Of a DNA stretch of 64,000 nt, positions 1-59,661 are shown piece after piece. Below the pieces are notes generated by a model. It worked only from the letters and a program-made list of their open reading frames with translations. It did not search any database and was not told the DNA's origin. Position 1 is the stretch's first letter, and the number at the start of each line of letters is the position of its first letter. The position numbers and the translations under genes were made by a program. The stretch is from the sequence record NC_017972.1; one strand, given 5' to 3'.

Positions 1-682
1 TGCAGGCACCGATATGCCAAACCTTGGCAATCTTTGCAGTTTTTTCCAGCATACGCAGGTAATTAGCCGCATGTTGGAAATCAGTCATCAGGATTTCATC
101 TTGACGACTGCCCACGCCGGATTTGTAACGGATGCTGTACGCTTGCTTACTCGGCACAACGGTAATGGTGATAACGCCACCAGTACCGCTAGCTTTGTAG
201 GTTTGAATCTTGCGCAGCTCCCGCTCGGTCAGCTCCACGCCTTTCGGTGCGCGAGTTTTAATCGAGTCAGAGAATCCAACTGGCGAACCAATATACTCAG
301 CTGCCATTTGCATGAATTCTTTGAGGCCGAAGTAGCACTCACGATCCCGCTTAGAAGCAGCGAGAATTTTCTCCTTCATTTCCTCGACTTTCGACAGTTG
401 CATGTTTTCTTTTTCTGGATGGGAGAACATCAGTTCACCGTCCGAGTACAGATGCACGCTGAACTTGAATTGAGCATCGTTGTAGGCGTCGTACATATCG
501 TACATTACACCAACAAATTTGCGACCTTCGTGTTCACCATCGAACGGCAGGATTTTGCCGTCTACGCTGTAAGCCGTGTTACGGGCAGGCAGCGCGAAAT
601 CAAGAATGCTGTCCAGTTCGGTTCGCAGGGCGATAGTTTCTGCGGCCAGCACAGGAGTTTCAGCAGTCATAGTCGAAGTCAT
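1..682 (-). CDS. hypothetical protein, 3' end runs off window
   Basis: Manual translation from ATG at 682 (MTSTMTAETPVLAAETIALR...) is open to position 1; purine-rich leader upstream; absent from ORF track because it is truncated. Confidence 0.75.
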   Translation of the reverse strand, partial: MTSTMTAETPVLAAETIALRTELDSILDFALPARNTAYSVDGKILPFDGEHEGRKFVGVMYDMYDAYNDAQFKFSVHLYSDGELMFSHPEKENMQLSKVEEMKEKILAASKRDRECYFGLKEFMQMAAEYIGSPVGFSDSIKTRAPKGVELTERELRKIQTYKASGTGGVITITVVPSKQAYSIRYKSGVGSRQDEILMTDFQHAANYLRMLEKTAKIAKVWHIGAC

Positions 683-727
683 GATTTTTCCCTTTGGTAT
701 TTTGGGTTAACTGGGATTGGATTATCC

Positions 728-1471
728 CTAGTTTGCTTCTACAAAAATTTCCGTCATAGGCATGTAGCGCTCACGGAAATATTGCTCATGGCGACCGCTA
801 TCGGGTGCGTTGTGCGTGTACTGCACTTTCACTTCGATAACTTTCGTCAAGCCTTTGGTTTGCAGATAGGCGGCGGTTTTCCCGGTAGGAGGCATGATGC
901 GCCGTCCCTCTTCTACAAAACATTTAATCGGGTCTTTCAGTGGACGATCCGTAGCGGATTTAAACCAGCGATCAACCGAACCCAACAAGAAAGGTTCCGT
1001 CGAGCCTTGCGGGTGAATCAGCAGGCCTTGGCCCTCGGCAGTTACGCCAATGCGCAGCGCTTCGATGCTGGTGCCGTGCAGCTGAATAATCGTCATTGGG
1101 CGGTGACGATAAATCGTAGGAATCTCTTCCACAAAACGTCGAATATGCGAGCGCGCCTGCTTCACAATAGCGGCCAGACAATCTTGGTAATGCGGATGAT
1201 CGAATTGCGCGCGGCTGTAGCATTGCTGGATTTGATCCAGAACATCCTCGGCGCGCAAATCTTTTGGCAAGAAAAGGGAGCCGGAGTTGTAAATTACATG
1301 GATCAAACCGCGCCCATTGTTGACGAGAAACCGACCGTCGTTTTCTTTTGTGGAATCCTCGATGCTAACAGTCATCAGGTCGCTTTGGCATTCGTGATTT
1401 TTATTCGCGTAGTGCCAACCAGCTCCGCCGTTAATCTTTGAGATATGCCGCATCAGATCATTCAGGTCCAT
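728..1471 (-). CDS. hypothetical protein (247 aa)
   Basis: ORF track; collinear with neighbours; no motif recognised. Confidence 0.75.
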   Translation of the reverse strand: MDLNDLMRHISKINGGAGWHYANKNHECQSDLMTVSIEDSTKENDGRFLVNNGRGLIHVIYNSGSLFLPKDLRAEDVLDQIQQCYSRAQFDHPHYQDCLAAIVKQARSHIRRFVEEIPTIYRHRPMTIIQLHGTSIEALRIGVTAEGQGLLIHPQGSTEPFLLGSVDRWFKSATDRPLKDPIKCFVEEGRRIMPPTGKTAAYLQTKGLTKVIEVKVQYTHNAPDSGRHEQYFRERYMPMTEIFVEAN

Positions 1472-1489
1472 CGTCGTCTACCTTTTCGT

Positions 1490-1996
1490 TTATGCTGCGT
1501 TTAAATTTTTCGGCTTGGGTATCTTGAAAGCTGGCGTTGAATCTTTACGCGGCAGCTCTTTGATTGCGTCAAGGAACTTGTGGTGTTCGCGGCTCAGCTT
1601 ATCGCGAGCTTCTGGCAGAGTGAACCACTTGCGTTTGCGCATGTGTTTTTCTTGCCACGAATCGAACTGCGATAGGTATTCCATTGCGTACATGACGACG
1701 ACTTGTTTCATGCCGTCTTTTTCGTATTCAAAGGTTCCGATCTTTTTGGTACATGTGCCGGTGACGCCTGCCTCTTCAAAGCATTCTTTCGCTGCGTTTT
1801 CCCGCGCGTCAAGGTGCTTTTCTTGACCGCCTTTAGTGAATCCCCACCACGCACTTTTCTTCAACTTTTTAACCAGCAGAACCTGCCGGATACCGTCCTT
1901 GTCACGGTAAGGAATACAACCCGATTGCTTGCGTACTTTGAGTTTTGTTTTCGGCAGCTCAGCGGGGGAAGCTTGAAGCGAAACCATCATCTGCAA
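1490..1996 (-). CDS. Nudix hydrolase, DIPP/Aps1-like
   Basis: Nudix box GGQEKHLDARENAAKECFEEAGV; C-terminal WQEKHMRKRKWF motif typical of the DIPP-like subfamily. Confidence 0.88.
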   Translation of the reverse strand: MQMMVSLQASPAELPKTKLKVRKQSGCIPYRDKDGIRQVLLVKKLKKSAWWGFTKGGQEKHLDARENAAKECFEEAGVTGTCTKKIGTFEYEKDGMKQVVVMYAMEYLSQFDSWQEKHMRKRKWFTLPEARDKLSREHHKFLDAIKELPRKDSTPAFKIPKPKNLNAA

Positions 1997-2056
1997 ATCC
2001 TCTAGGTATTAGTCGGGTACGCCGCTGTGCAACGTACCTTCTTAAATTACACCTTA

Positions 2057-2067
2057 TATTTACAGTT
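2057..2067 (-). promoter_or_regulatory. AACTGTAAATA motif copy 1 (candidate phage promoter)
   Basis: Exact copy overlapping the TAA stop of the small ORF, about 60 nt upstream of the Nudix gene. Confidence 0.6.
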
Positions 2068-2236
2068 AACGGCGCATGTCGTGAATGGCTTGCTCAGCCG
2101 CATCCACAAACGTCAAACCGCTATGGCCCCACGACCACGGCGCGGTCCAATCGGGATGGGAAATCAACTTTTTGCGGAAGCAAACGGTCAGCTTGAGGTC
2201 TTCCAAATCTTCAAGGAGTATCCGGTAATCAATCAT
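2066..2236 (-). CDS. small hypothetical protein (56 aa, MIDYRILLEDLEDLK...)
   Basis: Manual translation; fills the gap between two motif copies; below ORF-track size cutoff. Confidence 0.6.
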   Translation of the reverse strand: MIDYRILLEDLEDLKLTVCFRKKLISHPDWTAPWSWGHSGLTFVDAAEQAIHDMRR

Positions 2237-2273
2237 TTTATTCTCAGTGCGAGAGCGTTGTGGTTATACTGTA

Positions 2274-2284
2274 TATTTACAGTT
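2274..2284 (-). promoter_or_regulatory. AACTGTAAATA motif copy 2
   Basis: Exact copy immediately after the stop of 2285..3139, 38 nt upstream of ATG 2236. Confidence 0.6.
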
Positions 2285-3139
2285 TTACGAACGGAAGGTA
2301 ATGATGAATTTTGGCTCTTTGTAAACGCTTTCAGGCGAATCAAGCAAGGCCGCGACGTGCGGGTCAGCGGAACCCAAAACAACCTCGACCATTTCGTGCT
2401 TAACGGATTCCAGACCACGCGCCAGCATATCGAACAGGAAATAACTCGGCTGGTGCATTGTCACGAAACTATTACCGACTTCCACTTGGCGGCGGTGTGG
2501 TTTGGACAAAGCTGCATCGGCAGTCAGGCCAGCGATAACATCGTCAAAGTTTTTGACCAGAGCGCTAGTCGAATCTTCGATGTATCTATAGAAATCGCTG
2601 TAGCGGTCGTTTGCGAACGACGCATCCATTTGTGCATCAGGGTGGCGGTGCGCGTAAAACGCAATCGACAAGATGAAGTGTTTGTCGTTATCTCTTGCGT
2701 CCGGTTTACCGAGGTACAGATCGATACTCTGACCGACTTGCGTTTGGTACGTTTCGATACCGGCTAGACCGAACACATCTTGCACCTGCGCTACGATAGC
2801 TTTTACTTTCGTTTCCAGAACGCCGGAACGCTCAGCCAAATCGACAACGTGCGCAACCAATTGTTGGCGCGTTTTTTCGTCGGTGATGTTGTGGCCCGAC
2901 CATTCCTGTTTACCGCCACCAACCACAGCGAATCTGCGCGCTCCGTCTTCGACTTTGTAGAACCAAATACCGTAACCGTTTTTGACCAGACGGCGATGGG
3001 AATCCGGGCCGCTGTTAACCCACGCATTGCTGTCTGTGTGTTGGTTAGGGCGTTTGTGGGAAACGCTCACAAAACCCAGCTCTTCCAACTCCGTCATCAG
3101 CTGGTTGGCGACTTCGACGGAAATGATATTTTTACTCAT
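2285..3139 (-). CDS. hypothetical protein, member of a divergent ~270-300 aa family
   Basis: ORF track 2285..3244; start moved to MSKNII (3139), which overlaps the upstream stop. Confidence 0.75.
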   Translation of the reverse strand: MSKNIISVEVANQLMTELEELGFVSVSHKRPNQHTDSNAWVNSGPDSHRRLVKNGYGIWFYKVEDGARRFAVVGGGKQEWSGHNITDEKTRQQLVAHVVDLAERSGVLETKVKAIVAQVQDVFGLAGIETYQTQVGQSIDLYLGKPDARDNDKHFILSIAFYAHRHPDAQMDASFANDRYSDFYRYIEDSTSALVKNFDDVIAGLTADAALSKPHRRQVEVGNSFVTMHQPSYFLFDMLARGLESVKHEMVEVVLGSADPHVAALLDSPESVYKEPKFIITFRS

Positions 3140-45263: not shown

Positions 45264-45503
45264 TTAGCAGCTACGGCTAGTCAGTTTGTTTTTCGCTTCG
45301 TCCCACGGCACAACACCGGCGCTGATGTTTTGCGGATCGCGCACGACCAGCTCATAGCGGAAACCGTGTTTGCTATCACCGTAACCAGCAACCAGCCTGC
45401 CGCACTGGCAATTCATCCAGCGGAACGGAAAGCCTGCGCTATGGAGCGCGTAAGCGATATGGATTTTATCGTTCGTCGTCAGCAGACCGTTATCCTCAGT
45501 CAT
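45264..45503 (-). CDS. hypothetical protein (79 aa)
   Basis: ORF track. Confidence 0.65.
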   Translation of the reverse strand: MTEDNGLLTTNDKIHIAYALHSAGFPFRWMNCQCGRLVAGYGDSKHGFRYELVVRDPQNISAGVVPWDEAKNKLTSRSC

Positions 45504-45918
45504 AGTGACGATCCTTGACGAATTTGTACATGTCGGCGAACGATTTGAAATGATCTACCGAGTAATCGGGAATTTCCATTTCAAACTCTTCTTCGAGGGC
45601 CAGAACCATTTCGATTCGGTCCAGATCGTCTACGCCTGTATCCTCAAACGATTCGGCCATATTCTCATGCGTGATTTCTTCACCGAGAATATTTTGCACG
45701 GCGCTGAAAAAGCGACCGGCAAAAGAATGCTTATCGCCGTAGTCGATGTGGGCGCAAGCTTGCGTGCGCGGCAGCTCAGGCGCCGGGGCAGGTTCGGCAT
45801 CAGGCAGCACGCCGGTAATTTGCTCGACAGCAGCAAACAGGGTTTTCAGCTTGTGTACTACGAGCGGACTGCTAGCCATCGCAGTCAGCACGGCACGTTG
45901 TTCATTTTGAGTCAGCAT
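45496..45918 (-). CDS. acyl-carrier-protein-like protein lacking the Ppant Ser (Ser to Asp)
   Basis: ESFEDTGVDDLDRIEMVLALEEEFEMEIPD versus AcpP [30 protein letters not shown]; codon GAT checked in the DNA. Confidence 0.85.
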   Translation of the reverse strand: MLTQNEQRAVLTAMASSPLVVHKLKTLFAAVEQITGVLPDAEPAPAPELPRTQACAHIDYGDKHSFAGRFFSAVQNILGEEITHENMAESFEDTGVDDLDRIEMVLALEEEFEMEIPDYSVDHFKSFADMYKFVKDRHYD

Positions 45919-46168
45919 TGTTTTCCACTCCGTACAGCAGGGTTTGTCGTGCGAGTTGGTACGCACTATCAATCGGCGCAGGCGGAACATTTGGGAAATA
46001 TTGCACCGCTTGCAGGTACTCGACGATCATAGCCTCGGCTTTTTGGTCGTCCGCTTCGTAAAACAGCTCGGTCCAAACGCCTTTGATATAATCGCTCACA
46101 AAAGCTTGACCTAAGCGCTCGCTTGGGCGGTTTGCTTTCGTCCGCTTTTTCCACTCTTCAAAAGTCAT
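45902..46168 (-). CDS. hypothetical protein (88 aa)
   Basis: RLGQAF...ELFYEADD motif. Confidence 0.7.
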   Translation of the reverse strand: MTFEEWKKRTKANRPSERLGQAFVSDYIKGVWTELFYEADDQKAEAMIVEYLQAVQYFPNVPPAPIDSAYQLARQTLLYGVENNADSK

Positions 46169-58120: not shown

Positions 58121-58315
58121 TCAGAGACTGCCGACCAGTTTGGCCGACAAAGCGGGAACGAAAATATCTTGATCCAGATTGCAGTAGCCGCAACGCACGC
58201 GCCACAGCGGCGGCATGGTGTGCAGTGGTTTGAAATCTTTTTCTTCGCCTTGGCAAGTGGCGCCGCATTTCGAGCAAGTGAAAATCAGCGGCGGTGCCGA
58301 CAATACTTTGACCAT
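58121..58315 (-). CDS. small Zn-ribbon protein
   Basis: FTCSKCG...RCGYC. Confidence 0.72.
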   Translation of the reverse strand: MVKVLSAPPLIFTCSKCGATCQGEEKDFKPLHTMPPLWRVRCGYCNLDQDIFVPALSAKLVGSL

Positions 58316-58344: not shown

Positions 58345-58370
58345 AATAGGCACTCTCGCGAATGCCTATT
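58345..58370 (-). repeat. GCATTC/GAGTGC hairpin family, copy C
   Basis: AATAGGCATTC-gcga-GAGTGCCTATT. Confidence 0.65.
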
Positions 58371-58379
58371 AAAGCTGGT

Positions 58380-59105
58380 TTAAGCTTCGGGTTTTTCCGC
58401 TGGTTTTTCTACCGAGTCGCACCAGTACATCATGTCGTTCCACGTATGACGCAGCAGGTAGTAAACCGGCTCCACCATATCAGCAGGCGTTACCGATTGA
58501 ACGGCCTGCAAAAGCGTCAGGCGGTAAAACTGATTTGTATCGAAAATGCCGTACAGATATGCGTGCGGCGCGTTCGCTTCTCTTGCGGCTTCGGCTTCGG
58601 CCTCTTTCTCGATGCGCATTTGCTCGCACGCTTCTTTGTCGAAAGAGTTTTCATGCGCGGCAGCAGAGGCACGCACCCACGCGGCGAGCTGCGCAGCAAT
58701 AGCCGGGGATTTCATCAGCGGTTCTGGCGAGGTTTCGGTCGGCGCTACGGTTTCTTCTCCCAGTTCGTAAGCTTTTCTGAGTTCTTCTTTTTCAGCCTCG
58801 CTGGCAGGGCGCGTAACGCGGGTGACGGTCAGTTCCATCATTTGGTGCCAGTCAGGGTCAGCAACGGCCTTTTCGCAGTAGGCGATAATGTCACCAATGG
58901 TTTCCCATTCCTGCATCACGTCTTCGGGAATTTCGATGCAGAATTCGCCTTCCAGAATAAGGGTAATTTCGGCACGATCCGTTTCGTCGGCAAGCACGGA
59001 TTCCAACGAAGAGGCGACAAAGATATGCTCGCGCATTTCGTCCGTCACGGTGCAGATGGTGTCGAAAACCTGATTGGCGAGTTTTTTGATAGTGATAGTT
59101 GGCAT
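58380..59105 (-). CDS. N-terminal ACP-like domain lacking the Ppant Ser (Ser to Glu), fused to an unknown helical domain
   Basis: SSLESVLADETDRAEITLILEGEFCIEIPEDVMQEWETIGDIIAYC; codon GAA checked in the DNA. Confidence 0.78.
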   Translation of the reverse strand: MPTITIKKLANQVFDTICTVTDEMREHIFVASSLESVLADETDRAEITLILEGEFCIEIPEDVMQEWETIGDIIAYCEKAVADPDWHQMMELTVTRVTRPASEAEKEELRKAYELGEETVAPTETSPEPLMKSPAIAAQLAAWVRASAAAHENSFDKEACEQMRIEKEAEAEAAREANAPHAYLYGIFDTNQFYRLTLLQAVQSVTPADMVEPVYYLLRHTWNDMMYWCDSVEKPAEKPEA

Positions 59106-59130
59106 TTGTTCGATTCCTTGAAATGGGTTA

Positions 59131-59148
59131 GGGGCGCCGTAGCGCCCC
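59131..59148 (-). other. intergenic C(UACG)G stem-loop
   Basis: GGGGCGC-TACG-GCGCCCC. Confidence 0.6.
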
Positions 59149-59155
59149 AGTGGGA

Positions 59156-59587
59156 TTAGTTGCGGAACTGGCCGTCAGGGTGGCAGAAGTCGTAAATGGT
59201 ACGCTTCACGCCATTATCTTCGACCTTGCGCGCCCGACGAATTTTGTACGGGTCCAGCGCGTAAACAAAATTGTCCACGCGGAATTCAATGCGGCACCAC
59301 GGCGCGCTGTTGTATTCTTCCCACGCGACCAGTGCATCGCGCAGGCTGGCGAAGTCGTCGCAGTAATCGCAATCCTCGCCGTCTTCGGTGAGTTTACCGG
59401 CTGCAACGCCGTAGATGAAAATTTCACCTTCCAGCTTTTCCAGCTCTTCGGCACCCATCAGGCCGGTGCGTTTTGCCAGCGAGATTTGCGCCCGATACAT
59501 TTCCGTTTCGGTAATCAAACCTTGTTGGAACTGGCCGATCAGCTCAGCCGATTCAGGGCAGGGGAAAGCGATTTTGAATTGGGTCAT
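59156..59587 (-). CDS. hypothetical protein (143 aa)
   Basis: ORF track. Confidence 0.72.
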   Translation of the reverse strand: MTQFKIAFPCPESAELIGQFQQGLITETEMYRAQISLAKRTGLMGAEELEKLEGEIFIYGVAAGKLTEDGEDCDYCDDFASLRDALVAWEEYNSAPWCRIEFRVDNFVYALDPYKIRRARKVEDNGVKRTIYDFCHPDGQFRN

Positions 59588-59640: not shown

Positions 59641-59661
59641 AACCCCGCACTAGGCGGGGTT
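59641..59661 (-). terminator. probable intrinsic terminator
   Basis: AACCCCGC-CTAGT-GCGGGGTT followed by TGTC. Confidence 0.55.

What the first reader, a model, noticed from the sequence alone, without database searches (positions are those of the whole stretch)
58380..59105. Second, divergent ACP-like domain with Ser to Glu, fused to an unknown domain
Seen: the N-terminal ~80 aa read LAD-E-TDRAEITLILEGEFCIEIPEDVMQEWETIGDIIAYC. The Ppant Ser is again acidic (GAA) and again followed by x-D-R, as in the 45496 copy (DDLDR versus DETDR). The two copies differ strongly in sequence and architecture (C-terminal versus N-terminal domain). Inference: two acidic substitutions at the same catalytic position suggest selection rather than decay. 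The ACP mimic may act as a docking module that brings the C-terminal ~150 aa domain (LLRHTWNDMMYW) to an ACP-binding host target. Together the two genes are my best candidate for an undescribed ACP-mimic system.
Basis: partly seen in the sequence, partly recalled or inferred. Interest (0 to 1): 0.85.

Follow-up and report, generated by a model that had tools for sequence, protein, structure and literature searches.

The report
Serine-less ACP look-alike on phage protein
Gene gp378 of Pseudomonas phage Lu11 joins a recently acquired acyl-carrier-protein look-alike, which has glutamate where the cofactor serine should be, to a conserved phage-only helical domain of unknown function; the same acidic swap recurs in phage but not cellular carrier proteins, which suggests a decoy role that has not been tested.

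Summary
ORF 58380-59105(-) is LU11_gp378 (241 aa) of Pseudomonas phage Lu11. Residues ~8-82 are ACP-like, and Glu41 (GAA) sits exactly on the phosphopantetheine serine. The second copy, gp353, has Asp there.

- **Only two copies:** these are the only ACP-like domains in the 280-kb genome. They are not recent paralogues.
- **Acidic swap is recurrent in viruses:** in motif-based samples that do not constrain the serine position, 6 of 78 viral ACP-like domains carry Asp/Glu there and no other non-Ser residue occurs. The count is 0 of 115 in cellular genomes.
- **gp353 is conserved:** DDLDR is kept in relatives down to 68% identity (omega 0.26).
- **The gp378 ACP module is very young:** a syntenic relative with 91-93% nucleotide identity encodes only the C-terminal domain (122 aa), and phage HRDY3 carries a different N-domain there.
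- **The constant part is new:** it is a ~100-aa all-helical domain (pLDDT 95) with no Pfam or PDB match.
- **Not a system:** the "two-gene ACP-mimic system" is not supported, because gp353 occurs without the gp378 module and HRDY3's orthologous ACPs keep Ser.

A non-modifiable ACP decoy or docking role is plausible but untested.

The parts
58380..59105 (-). gp378 CDS (241 aa, LU11_gp378)
   Evidence: ORF list. Annotated as a hypothetical protein. A 99% identical protein, P0001, lies on a 97% identical metagenome contig.
58851..59105 (-). ACP-like module, aa 1-85 (pI 4.05, net charge -15)
   Evidence: ACP homology from PDB phmmer, PHROG 5934, NCBIfam and hhalign at 95.4%. Charge.
58983..58985 (-). 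GAA codon of Glu41, at the position of the phosphopantetheine-bearing Ser
   Evidence: Alignments; sequence.
58701..58850 (-). Acidic linker, aa 86-135
   Evidence: No family hit. BLASTP to HRDY3 XDJ15349 starts at aa 96.
58401..58700 (-). Conserved all-helical C-terminal domain, aa 136-235 (motifs E-x-S-[FY]-D, VD-x3-FY, EPVYLLL-x3-WND-x3-W)
   Evidence: 79 relatives among 1.84 billion representative proteins, most of them matching only this part. Alignments A1 and A4. AlphaFold2 pLDDT 95.4. No Pfam, PHROG-function or PDB match.
58671..59102 (-). Lineage-specific segment (aa 2-145: ACP module, linker and a diverged start of the C-domain). A relative at 91-93% nt identity has only 75 nt here.
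   Evidence: blastn of L376 against the window breaks right after the ATG (59103) and resumes at 58670. L253 shows the same architecture.
59131..59148 (-). GC-rich hairpin GGGGCGC-TAC-GGCGCCCC between gp379 and gp378, conserved in relative L253
58345..58370 (-). Imperfect hairpin AATAGGCATT-cgcgag-AGTGCCTATT just after the gp378 stop codon
59892..59918 (-). Annotated sigma-70-like promoter upstream of gp380-gp379-gp378
   Evidence: GenBank annotation and sequence. A terminator-like hairpin at 59661-59641 lies between gp380 and gp379, so read-through into gp378 is not shown.
45496..45918 (-). gp353 CDS (140 aa): N-terminal extension plus C-terminal ACP-like domain (aa 63-140 = 45499-45732) with Asp98 (GAT, 45625-45627) at the Ser position
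   Evidence: Pfam PP-binding at 25.2 bits, above the gathering score. Homologues P0088-P0090 keep DDLDR. Omega 0.26.

Best explanation
gp378 is a modular accessory protein of jumbo phage Lu11.

**Constant part.** A ~100-aa all-helical domain (aa 136-235) belongs to a family seen so far only on phage or phage-like contigs. It is a free-standing protein in the closest relatives.

**Added part.** In Lu11 and a 97% identical strain, a segment directly behind the start codon adds a complete ACP-like domain plus an acidic linker. This domain cannot be modified, because Glu41 replaces the phosphopantetheine serine.

**Proposed mechanism.** The module is a cofactor-less ACP decoy that keeps the charge of the real thing.
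1. Through the conserved acidic helix II (D40, D43, E46, E52, E54) it docks on the basic ACP-binding surface of a host ACP client, such as fatty-acid, phospholipid or lipid A enzymes.
2. The carboxylate occupies the place of the phosphopantetheine phosphate.
3. It therefore cannot be loaded by AcpS and cannot carry an acyl chain.
4. It either blocks the client or holds the C-terminal domain next to it.

**gp353** (Asp at the same site) would be an independent, older decoy of the same kind.

**Shown:** gene anatomy, ACP homology, Ser->Glu/Asp, the indel, the new domain family and its confident model, purifying selection on gp353 and on the C-domain, and recurrence of acidic substitutions in viral ACP-like proteins.

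**Inferred:** binding to ACP clients, phosphate mimicry, inhibition or tethering, and early expression.
For: **ACP homology and charge.**
- ACP homology with Glu on the invariant Ser.
- Helix II acidic residues are retained, and the domain has pI 4.05 and net charge -15.

**No carrier role in Lu11.**
- gp378 and gp353 are the only two ACP-like domains in the whole genome, and neither has Ser.
- No FAS or PPTase gene is annotated.

**Acidic substitution is selected.**
- Viral sample chosen without reference to the Ser position: 72 Ser, 4 Glu, 2 Asp and nothing else. A second viral sample gave 50 Ser and 1 Glu.
- Cellular sample: 114 Ser, 1 Thr, 0 acidic. Fisher p=0.004.
- The acidic variants are scattered on the tree.
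- Asp and Glu need at least 2 nt changes from any Ser codon, whereas Thr, Asn, Gly and Ala, which are one step away, are not seen in viruses.
- gp353 DDLDR is invariant in relatives of 92, 91 and 68% identity, with omega 0.26.
- The rare Arg at +3 is shared by both Lu11 copies.

**Modularity of gp378.**
- There are three N-terminal states at one syntenic locus.
- The C-domain is under purifying selection, omega 0.22.

**Literature.**
- Excess ACP stops E. coli growth by inhibiting glycerol-3-phosphate acyltransferase, and apo-ACP is the stronger inhibitor (PMC3896788).
- The Ppant phosphate is read by a conserved Arg of an ACP partner (PMC8547962).
Against: - No interaction, toxicity or expression data exist.
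- The ACP module of gp378 is absent from a relative at 91-93% nt identity. It has no close homologue among 15 billion proteins, so its conservation cannot be tested. The 6 differences from the 97% strain are 3 synonymous and 3 non-synonymous.
- HRDY3's orthologous ACPs keep Ser, so the ancestral phage ACP function may need the cofactor.
- Asp is also a good helix N-cap residue, so charge mimicry is not the only reason for an acidic residue.
- The fold of the N-domain was not modelled: single-sequence AlphaFold2 failed.
The filtering HMM was built from relatives of gp378.
- SpoT is reported not to bind apo-ACP, so not every ACP client is a candidate target.
Confidence: 0.35

Rival explanations
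1. Passenger module. The ACP-like segment is a recent domain accretion with no ACP-related activity, at most a soluble acidic spacer. The acidic residue only caps helix II once the cofactor is no longer needed. All function of gp378 lies in the C-terminal domain.
For: - The C-domain stands alone in close relatives, and the indel sits right behind the ATG.
- No homologue of the module exists other than a 99% identical one.
- Three of the four differences within aa 1-130 against the 97% strain are non-synonymous.
- Pfam PP-binding is below threshold.
Against: - All ACP hallmark positions and the extreme acidity are intact.
- The same rare pair of features, acidic residue plus Arg at +3, is found in the independently conserved gp353.
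- In viral ACP-likes only Asp/Glu replace Ser, never the mutationally closer Thr, Asn, Gly or Ala.
Confidence: 0.25
2. Cofactor-independent scaffold. As in apicomplexan mitochondrial ACP, the Ser-less ACP-like domains are structural subunits or adaptors of a complex, phage or host. That complex is not a classical acyl-ACP enzyme. gp378's own C-domain is one possible partner.
For: - There is a precedent for Ppant-independent ACP function with a substituted Ser (PMC8547962).
- gp353 is stably conserved with an N-terminal extension.
- Jumbo phages often carry duplicated ACP genes of unknown role (PMC13573597).
- HRDY3 has two adjacent ACP genes.
Against: - No LYR-type or other known ACP-binding partner was found. 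The C-domain has no Pfam hit and no Foldseek hit to PDB, which holds ISD11 and LYRM structures.
- The C-domain needs no ACP module in close relatives.
Confidence: 0.2
3. General polyanion mimic. The very acidic module imitates nucleic acid or another polyanion and blocks a DNA- or RNA-binding host defence protein, as the acidic early proteins of other phages do.
For: - Net charge is -15 in 85 aa and -27 over the whole protein.
- The gene lies in a block of small unknown genes downstream of an annotated sigma-70-like promoter.
Against: - Homology is specifically to ACP over helices II-IV, not just acidic composition.
- There are no PADLOC hits.
- This reading does not explain why the Ser position specifically is acidic.
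Confidence: 0.1
4. Two-gene ACP-mimic system. gp353 and gp378 act together as one undescribed system.
For: Both are Ser-less with D-[DE]-x-D-R, and they are the only ACP-like domains in the genome.
Against: - The genes are 12.5 kb apart with no shared conserved neighbours.
- A syntenic relative keeps gp353 (DDLDR) while its gp378 orthologue lacks the ACP module.
- HRDY3 has Ser-bearing ACPs at the gp353 locus and a different N-domain at the gp378 locus.
Confidence: 0.05
5. Genuine carrier protein modified on another residue, for example one of S32, S33 or S36.
For: Serines lie 5-9 residues upstream of the motif.
Against: - PPTases act on the Ser at the N-terminus of helix II in the D-S-L context. 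All alignments put Glu41 there.
- No PPTase or acyl-processing gene is annotated in Lu11.
Confidence: 0.02

Closest known systems
Bacterial type II acyl carrier protein (AcpP; Pfam PF00550 PP-binding)
   Same: Homologous over about 75 residues. The acidic recognition helix II, the EEEF-x-IEIP core, similar size and pI ~4 are shared.
   Different: Glu (gp378) or Asp (gp353) replaces the phosphopantetheine Ser, so no cofactor or acyl chain can be carried. gp378 is below the Pfam and NCBIfam cut-offs. It is fused to an unrelated domain. It is not a recent copy of host acpP: E. coli AcpP matches only at E ~0.03-0.05.
Phage-encoded ACPs (PHROG 5934; HRDY3 XDJ15383/XDJ15384, Yersinia phage fHe-Yen9-04 g153, Ralstonia phage RP13 ORF197)
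   Same: These are the closest sequence relatives. gp353 sits at the locus syntenic with the HRDY3 ACP pair. The architecture of an N-terminal extension plus a C-terminal ACP is shared with XDJ15383 and g153.
   Different: All of these keep the DSL serine. Their function is itself unknown; they are usually annotated as auxiliary metabolic genes.
Apicomplexan mitochondrial ACP without a phosphopantetheine site (Plasmodium mACP, Ser->Phe; Toxoplasma Cys/Gly)
   Same: An ACP fold kept under selection after loss of the modified Ser, working purely through protein-protein contacts (PMC8547962).
   Different: The replacement there is hydrophobic or small, and the partner (Isd11) co-evolved by losing its phosphate-binding Arg. 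Here the replacement is always acidic, which would instead fit partners that still expect the phosphate. No partner is known.
Growth inhibition by excess ACP or apo-ACP in E. coli (inhibition of glycerol-3-phosphate acyltransferase)
   Same: Shows that an unmodified ACP can act as a potent competitive blocker of an ACP client (PMC3896788).
   Different: That is an artificial overproduction phenotype of the host's own protein. Nothing of the kind has been shown for a phage protein or in Pseudomonas.
Undescribed phage helical domain family (A0A8S5UGH5 of Myoviridae sp. ctshb19; HRDY3 XDJ15349; P0002-P0086)
   Same: The gp378 C-domain is a clear member: E down to 5e-49, with invariant Asp and Trp and nearly invariant S, D, Y, P and ND.
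   Different: Only gp378 and its 99% twin carry an ACP-like N-terminal module. Other members stand alone or carry other unknown N- or C-terminal extensions.

Membership tests
Acyl carrier protein / PP-binding superfamily (PF00550) | Sequence match above the curated family threshold | tested here: not met
   gp378 scores 14 bits against the Pfam gathering score of 20.8. NCBIfam ACP models give 17-29 bits against cut-offs of 66-106. gp353 does pass Pfam, at 25.2 bits.
Acyl carrier protein / PP-binding superfamily (PF00550) | Homology to bona fide ACPs over helices II-IV | tested here: met
   phmmer against PDB: 57 of the 58 hits are ACP or other carrier-protein chains, best E 6.4e-5. hhalign against 30 cellular ACPs: 95.4% probability, E 2e-8. 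PHROG 5934: E 1e-6.
Acyl carrier protein / PP-binding superfamily (PF00550) | Four-helix-bundle fold | tested here: inconclusive
   Single-sequence AlphaFold2 gave pLDDT 40.
Acyl carrier protein / PP-binding superfamily (PF00550) | Conserved Ser of the D-S-L motif that carries 4'-phosphopantetheine | tested here: not met
   Glu41 (GAA) in gp378 and Asp98 (GAT) in gp353 occupy the Ser column.
Acyl carrier protein / PP-binding superfamily (PF00550) | Acidic recognition helix II and overall pI ~4 | tested here: met
   D40, D43, E46, E52 and E54 are aligned to E. coli D35, D38, E41, E47 and E49. E48 is replaced by Gly. pI 4.05, net charge -15.
Acyl carrier protein / PP-binding superfamily (PF00550) | Actual phosphopantetheinylation or acyl carriage | not testable with these tools
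   Needs mass spectrometry. It is chemically excluded at Glu or Asp.
Phage auxiliary-metabolic acpP (Ser-bearing phage ACPs) | Retains the DSL serine like host AcpP | tested here: not met
   HRDY3, fHe-Yen9-04 and RP13 ACPs keep Ser, and both Lu11 copies do not. Whole-genome HMM scan of Lu11.
Cofactor-independent ACP scaffolds (apicomplexan mACP type) | Ser lost but the domain maintained by selection | tested here: met
   gp353: omega 0.26 and DDLDR invariant down to 68% identity. For the gp378 module there is too little divergence to tell.
Cofactor-independent ACP scaffolds (apicomplexan mACP type) | Defined protein partner (LYR-motif protein) bound without the cofactor | not tested
   No partner is known. 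The C-domain shows no Pfam LYR hit and no PDB fold match.
New phage helical domain family (gp378 C-domain) | Conserved motifs E-x-S-[FY]-D, VD-x3-FY and PVYLLL-x3-WND-x3-W in a ~95-aa helical domain | tested here: met
   Alignments A1 and A4: D26 and W98 invariant; S24, D59, Y64, P83, N93 and D94 at 90% or more. AlphaFold2 pLDDT 95.4, pTM 0.82.
Known anti-defence or defence proteins | Match to a PADLOC model or a named PHROG function | tested here: not met
   No PADLOC hit for gp376-gp379 or gp353. The only PHROG match for the C-domain is the weak phrog_26826, of unknown function.

The most novel reading that the evidence does not exclude
Phages have repeatedly evolved non-modifiable, phosphate-mimicking ACP decoys (Ser->Asp/Glu). 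These would jam or hijack host ACP-dependent enzymes or ACP-sensing regulators during takeover. Lu11 carries two of them: an old conserved one (gp353), and a newly captured one spliced onto a novel-fold effector domain (gp378) that it may deliver to the ACP client.
Probability: 0.25. Interest if true: 0.75.

Novelty: new variant of a known kind. Interest (0 to 1): 0.5.

Why it matters
ACP is the most connected small protein of bacterial lipid metabolism. In E. coli an unmodified copy is already known to be toxic.

If phages use serine-less, acidic ACP look-alikes as decoys, that would be a new host-takeover strategy. It would also be a natural source of protein inhibitors of fatty-acid, phospholipid or lipid A synthesis in Pseudomonas.

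The survey result stands independently of gp378. Acidic residues, and only acidic residues, replace the cofactor serine in about 7% of sampled viral ACP-like domains and in none of 115 cellular ones. This gives a simple sequence rule for splitting the many "phage acpP auxiliary metabolic genes" into probable carriers and probable non-carriers.

The C-terminal domain is a confidently modelled helical fold with no solved relative. It is widespread on phage-like contigs and combines with different partner modules, so it is a good target for structural and functional work.

Tried and rejected
- **Full-length model:** single-sequence AlphaFold2 of full-length gp378 was unusable (pLDDT 40).
- **Combined alignment:** one alignment holding both ACPs and C-domain relatives, so that the whole protein could be modelled, failed. 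MAFFT placed the ACPs on the C-domain columns (5-15% identity). The last structure job therefore went to the C-domain alone.
- **Locus search with A1:** The search for related loci with the broad C-domain alignment found no stretch conserved enough. Single-protein scans of IMG/VR returned only Lu11 itself.
- **Wasted scan:** the first DNA-pattern scan was mis-framed by one N and returned no ACPs. The pattern was validated locally and re-run.
- **Function of the C-domain:** Pfam, PHROGs, NCBIfam, PADLOC and PDB sequence and fold searches gave nothing for the C-domain or its fusion partners.
- **LYR idea:** the conserved F-Y-R could in principle be an LYR-like ACP-binding motif. It was dropped: no Pfam LYR hit, no Foldseek hit to PDB, and the Arg is not conserved.
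- **C-domain as diverged ACP:** rejected, hhalign probability 0.05%.
- **4 of 24 Ser-less ACPs among gp378's nearest hits:** not used as a frequency. All four sit at the E-value cut-off (35-37 bits), where the query's own Glu lifts them in.
- **Antisense ORF:** the 265-aa ORF 58362-59159(+) is treated as a shadow ORF. Its Arg/Phe/Gly-rich product has no homologues, while the minus-strand protein has many.
Full report
**Where we are.** The window is the last 64 kb of Pseudomonas phage Lu11 (NC_017972.1, 280.5 kb, host P. putida). Window coordinate equals record coordinate minus 216538. The finding is the annotated hypothetical gene LU11_gp378 (58380-59105, minus strand, 241 aa). The 'other copy' is LU11_gp353, annotated as 45496-45918 (140 aa). 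Both lie in long co-oriented blocks of small unknown genes. GenBank annotates a sigma-70-like promoter at window 59918-59892, upstream of gp380-gp379-gp378. A terminator-like hairpin follows gp380, so early expression of gp378 is plausible but not shown.

- Searching the whole protein against PDB returns 57 ACP or other carrier-protein chains among its 58 hits (best E 6.4e-5; the one exception is a weak match in the linker). 'LADETD' is laid on 'GADSLD'.
- PHROG 5934 (acyl carrier protein) matches at E 1e-6, and NCBIfam ACP models at E 7e-7.
- An hhalign comparison with a profile of 30 cellular ACPs taken from an independent genome sample gives 95.4% probability, E 2e-8, with Glu41 on the invariant Ser.
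- gp378 is nevertheless a diverged member. It is below the Pfam gathering score (14 against 20.8 bits) and far below the NCBIfam cut-offs.
- The helix II acidic residues are kept (D40, D43, E46, E52, E54), and the module has pI 4.05 and net charge -15.
- gp353 passes Pfam PP-binding at 25.2 bits and has Asp98 (GAT) on the Ser column.
- The two ACP-like domains show no significant pairwise similarity, so they are not recent duplicates.
- An HMM scan of all six-frame ORFs of the whole genome finds only these two ACP-like domains. No fatty-acid-synthesis or phosphopantetheinyl-transferase gene is annotated. Lu11 therefore has no serine-bearing carrier protein at all.

**Is the acidic residue chance or decay?** I sampled ACP-like domains with patterns that do not constrain the Ser position.
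- A peptide pattern on the EEEF-x2-EIPD core returned 51 viral loci: 50 Ser and 1 Glu.
Of these, 78 are ACP-like by HMM: 72 Ser, 4 Glu, 2 Asp and nothing else. As unique motifs that is 63, 3 and 2.
- The same pattern on bacterial and archaeal genomes gave 115 ACP-like matches: 114 Ser, 1 Thr and no acidic residue. Fisher p is 0.004, or 0.024 on unique motifs.
- On a poorly resolved tree of 82 viral domains, the eight acidic rows need eight changes and each sits next to Ser-bearing relatives.
- Asp and Glu are at least two nucleotide changes from every Ser codon. The one-step neighbours that would also cap a helix (Thr, Asn, Gly) do not appear in the viral sample.
- Arg three residues later is rare (at most 1 of 68 viral and 2 of 74 cellular unique motifs) yet present in both Lu11 copies.
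- gp353 has relatives at 92, 91 and 68% identity that all keep GVDDLDRIEMVLALEEEFEMEIPDYSVD. Against the 91% relative its omega is 0.26.

**What gp378 really is.**
- An exhaustive HMMER search of 1.84 billion representatives found 79 relatives. Most match only residues ~136-235, a minority match only the ACP part, and none matches both.
- The C-terminal part defines a ~95-aa family, mostly free-standing 100-130-aa proteins. It has an invariant Asp and Trp and nearly invariant S, D, Y, P and N-D in the motifs E-x-S-[FY]-D, VD-x3-FY and PVYLLL-x3-WND-x3-W.
- With 56 sequences AlphaFold2 gives a very confident all-helical model (pLDDT 95.4, pTM 0.82).
- The model has no Foldseek match in PDB. In BFVD it matches only itself and one homologue.
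- Neither the domain nor its varied fusion partners hit Pfam, PHROG functions, NCBIfam or PADLOC.
- Its genomic contexts are unidirectional arrays of small unknown genes on large phage-like contigs.

**The ACP module is a very recent add-on.** Three orthologous states exist at one syntenic locus.
1. Lu11 and a 97% identical metagenomic strain (L007) have ACP(Glu), linker and C-domain.
2. Contig L376 aligns to the window at 91-93% nucleotide identity over 14 kb with identical gene order. It encodes a 122-aa protein that is the C-domain only. Homology stops right after the ATG (window 59103) and resumes at 58670, so 432 nt in Lu11 face 75 nt in the relative. L253 shows the same, including the conserved upstream hairpin and ribosome-binding site.
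3. Phage HRDY3 is syntenic over at least ten genes. It carries a different ~65-aa N-domain on the same C-domain.

The C-domain is under purifying selection (omega 0.22). It is therefore the constant, self-sufficient core, and N-terminal modules are swapped onto it. L376 still has gp353 with DDLDR, so the two Lu11 genes are not a co-inherited system. At the gp353 locus, HRDY3 has two adjacent ACP genes that keep Ser.

**Mechanism.** The best-supported reading is that the Ser-less acidic ACP-like domains are cofactor-independent ACP look-alikes that act by protein-protein contact.
- I favour a decoy or docking role on host ACP clients, at about 0.35.
- The recognition helix is intact, and the negative charge sits where the phosphodiester would be.
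- Unmodified ACP is already known to inhibit glycerol-3-phosphate acyltransferase and to stop E. coli growth (PMC3896788).
- ACP partners read the phosphate through a conserved Arg (PMC8547962).
- In gp378 the module could block a client on its own or hold the C-domain next to it.
- Because the C-domain works alone in close relatives, delivery cannot be its essential mode of action.
- Rivals, scored separately in the report: a functionless passenger module, a scaffold for another complex as in apicomplexan mACP, a general polyanion mimic, and a true carrier modified elsewhere.
- No paper describing acidic Ser substitutions in phage ACPs turned up in the literature searches I ran. Phage ACPs are reported as auxiliary genes or unexplained duplicates.

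**Verdict.** I class it as a new variant of a known kind (Ser-less ACP-like proteins) attached to an undescribed domain family. Interest is moderate. The gp378 fusion itself is confined to Lu11 and one 97% identical strain, but the virus-enriched acidic-ACP class and the novel-fold domain are worth following.

Noticed in passing
L020:6001-6237 (bacterial MAG GCA_052840945.1): A 78-aa ACP with ADELD (Glu at the Ser position) sits between plsX and rnc, the canonical acpP slot of Firmicutes-type genomes. This may be a cellular organism whose lipid-pathway ACP cannot be modified.
   Followed up: partly
window 59131-59148, 58345-58370 and 59641-59661 (- strand): GC-rich stem-loops sit in the intergenic gaps around gp378-gp380. 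The one before gp378 (GGGGCGC-TAC-GGCGCCCC) is conserved in relative L253. Only the one after gp380 looks like an intrinsic terminator.
   Followed up: partly
window 58121-58315 (-), gp377: This 64-aa protein has a CxxC...CxxC zinc-ribbon pattern directly downstream of gp378. It is conserved in L376 but absent downstream in L253.
   Followed up: no
L007 (ENA ERZ15184938 contig), positions 1-3048 versus the window end: This 97% identical Lu11-like contig runs from the right end of the Lu11 record into genes of its left end (gp006...). The deposited linear record is therefore a permuted or terminally redundant genome, and gp378 belongs to one block with gp001-gp020.
   Followed up: partly
L209 (viral contig), P0059 and P0041: Some ACP-like proteins carry an N-terminal signal peptide, lipoprotein signal or transmembrane segment. 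L209 has DELD and P0059 has DDLD. This suggests exported, cofactor-less ACP-like proteins.
   Followed up: no
L004:2208-3177 (phage HRDY3 XDJ15383/XDJ15384): Two adjacent, overlapping ACP genes, one with a 160-aa N-terminal extension, both keep the DSLD serine. They sit at the locus orthologous to Lu11 gp353.
   Followed up: partly
P0003, P0005, P0009, P0026, P0037 (C-domain family members): A second conserved ~70-aa module (…NMLHAAF-x2-GQ-x-F…DF-x-I/V-P) follows the C-domain in several members. P0010 and P0025 instead carry a Cys-x2-Cys tail. All are of unknown function.
   Followed up: no
L362:5663 (+), cellular sample: The single non-Ser cellular ACP-like motif has Thr and also Arg at +3 (DTLDRIELVLALEEEF). 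It resembles gp353's helix II.
   Followed up: no
window 45496-45990 (-): The gp353 ORF can be extended 24 codons upstream (MFRLRRLIVRTNSHDKPCCTEWKT...). The annotation and all homologues start at MLT(Q/R)NEQ, so the shorter start is probably right.
   Followed up: partly
window 58362-59159 (+): A 265-aa antisense ORF fully overlaps gp378. It has an odd Arg/Phe/Gly-rich composition and no homologues, so it is a shadow ORF.
   Followed up: partly
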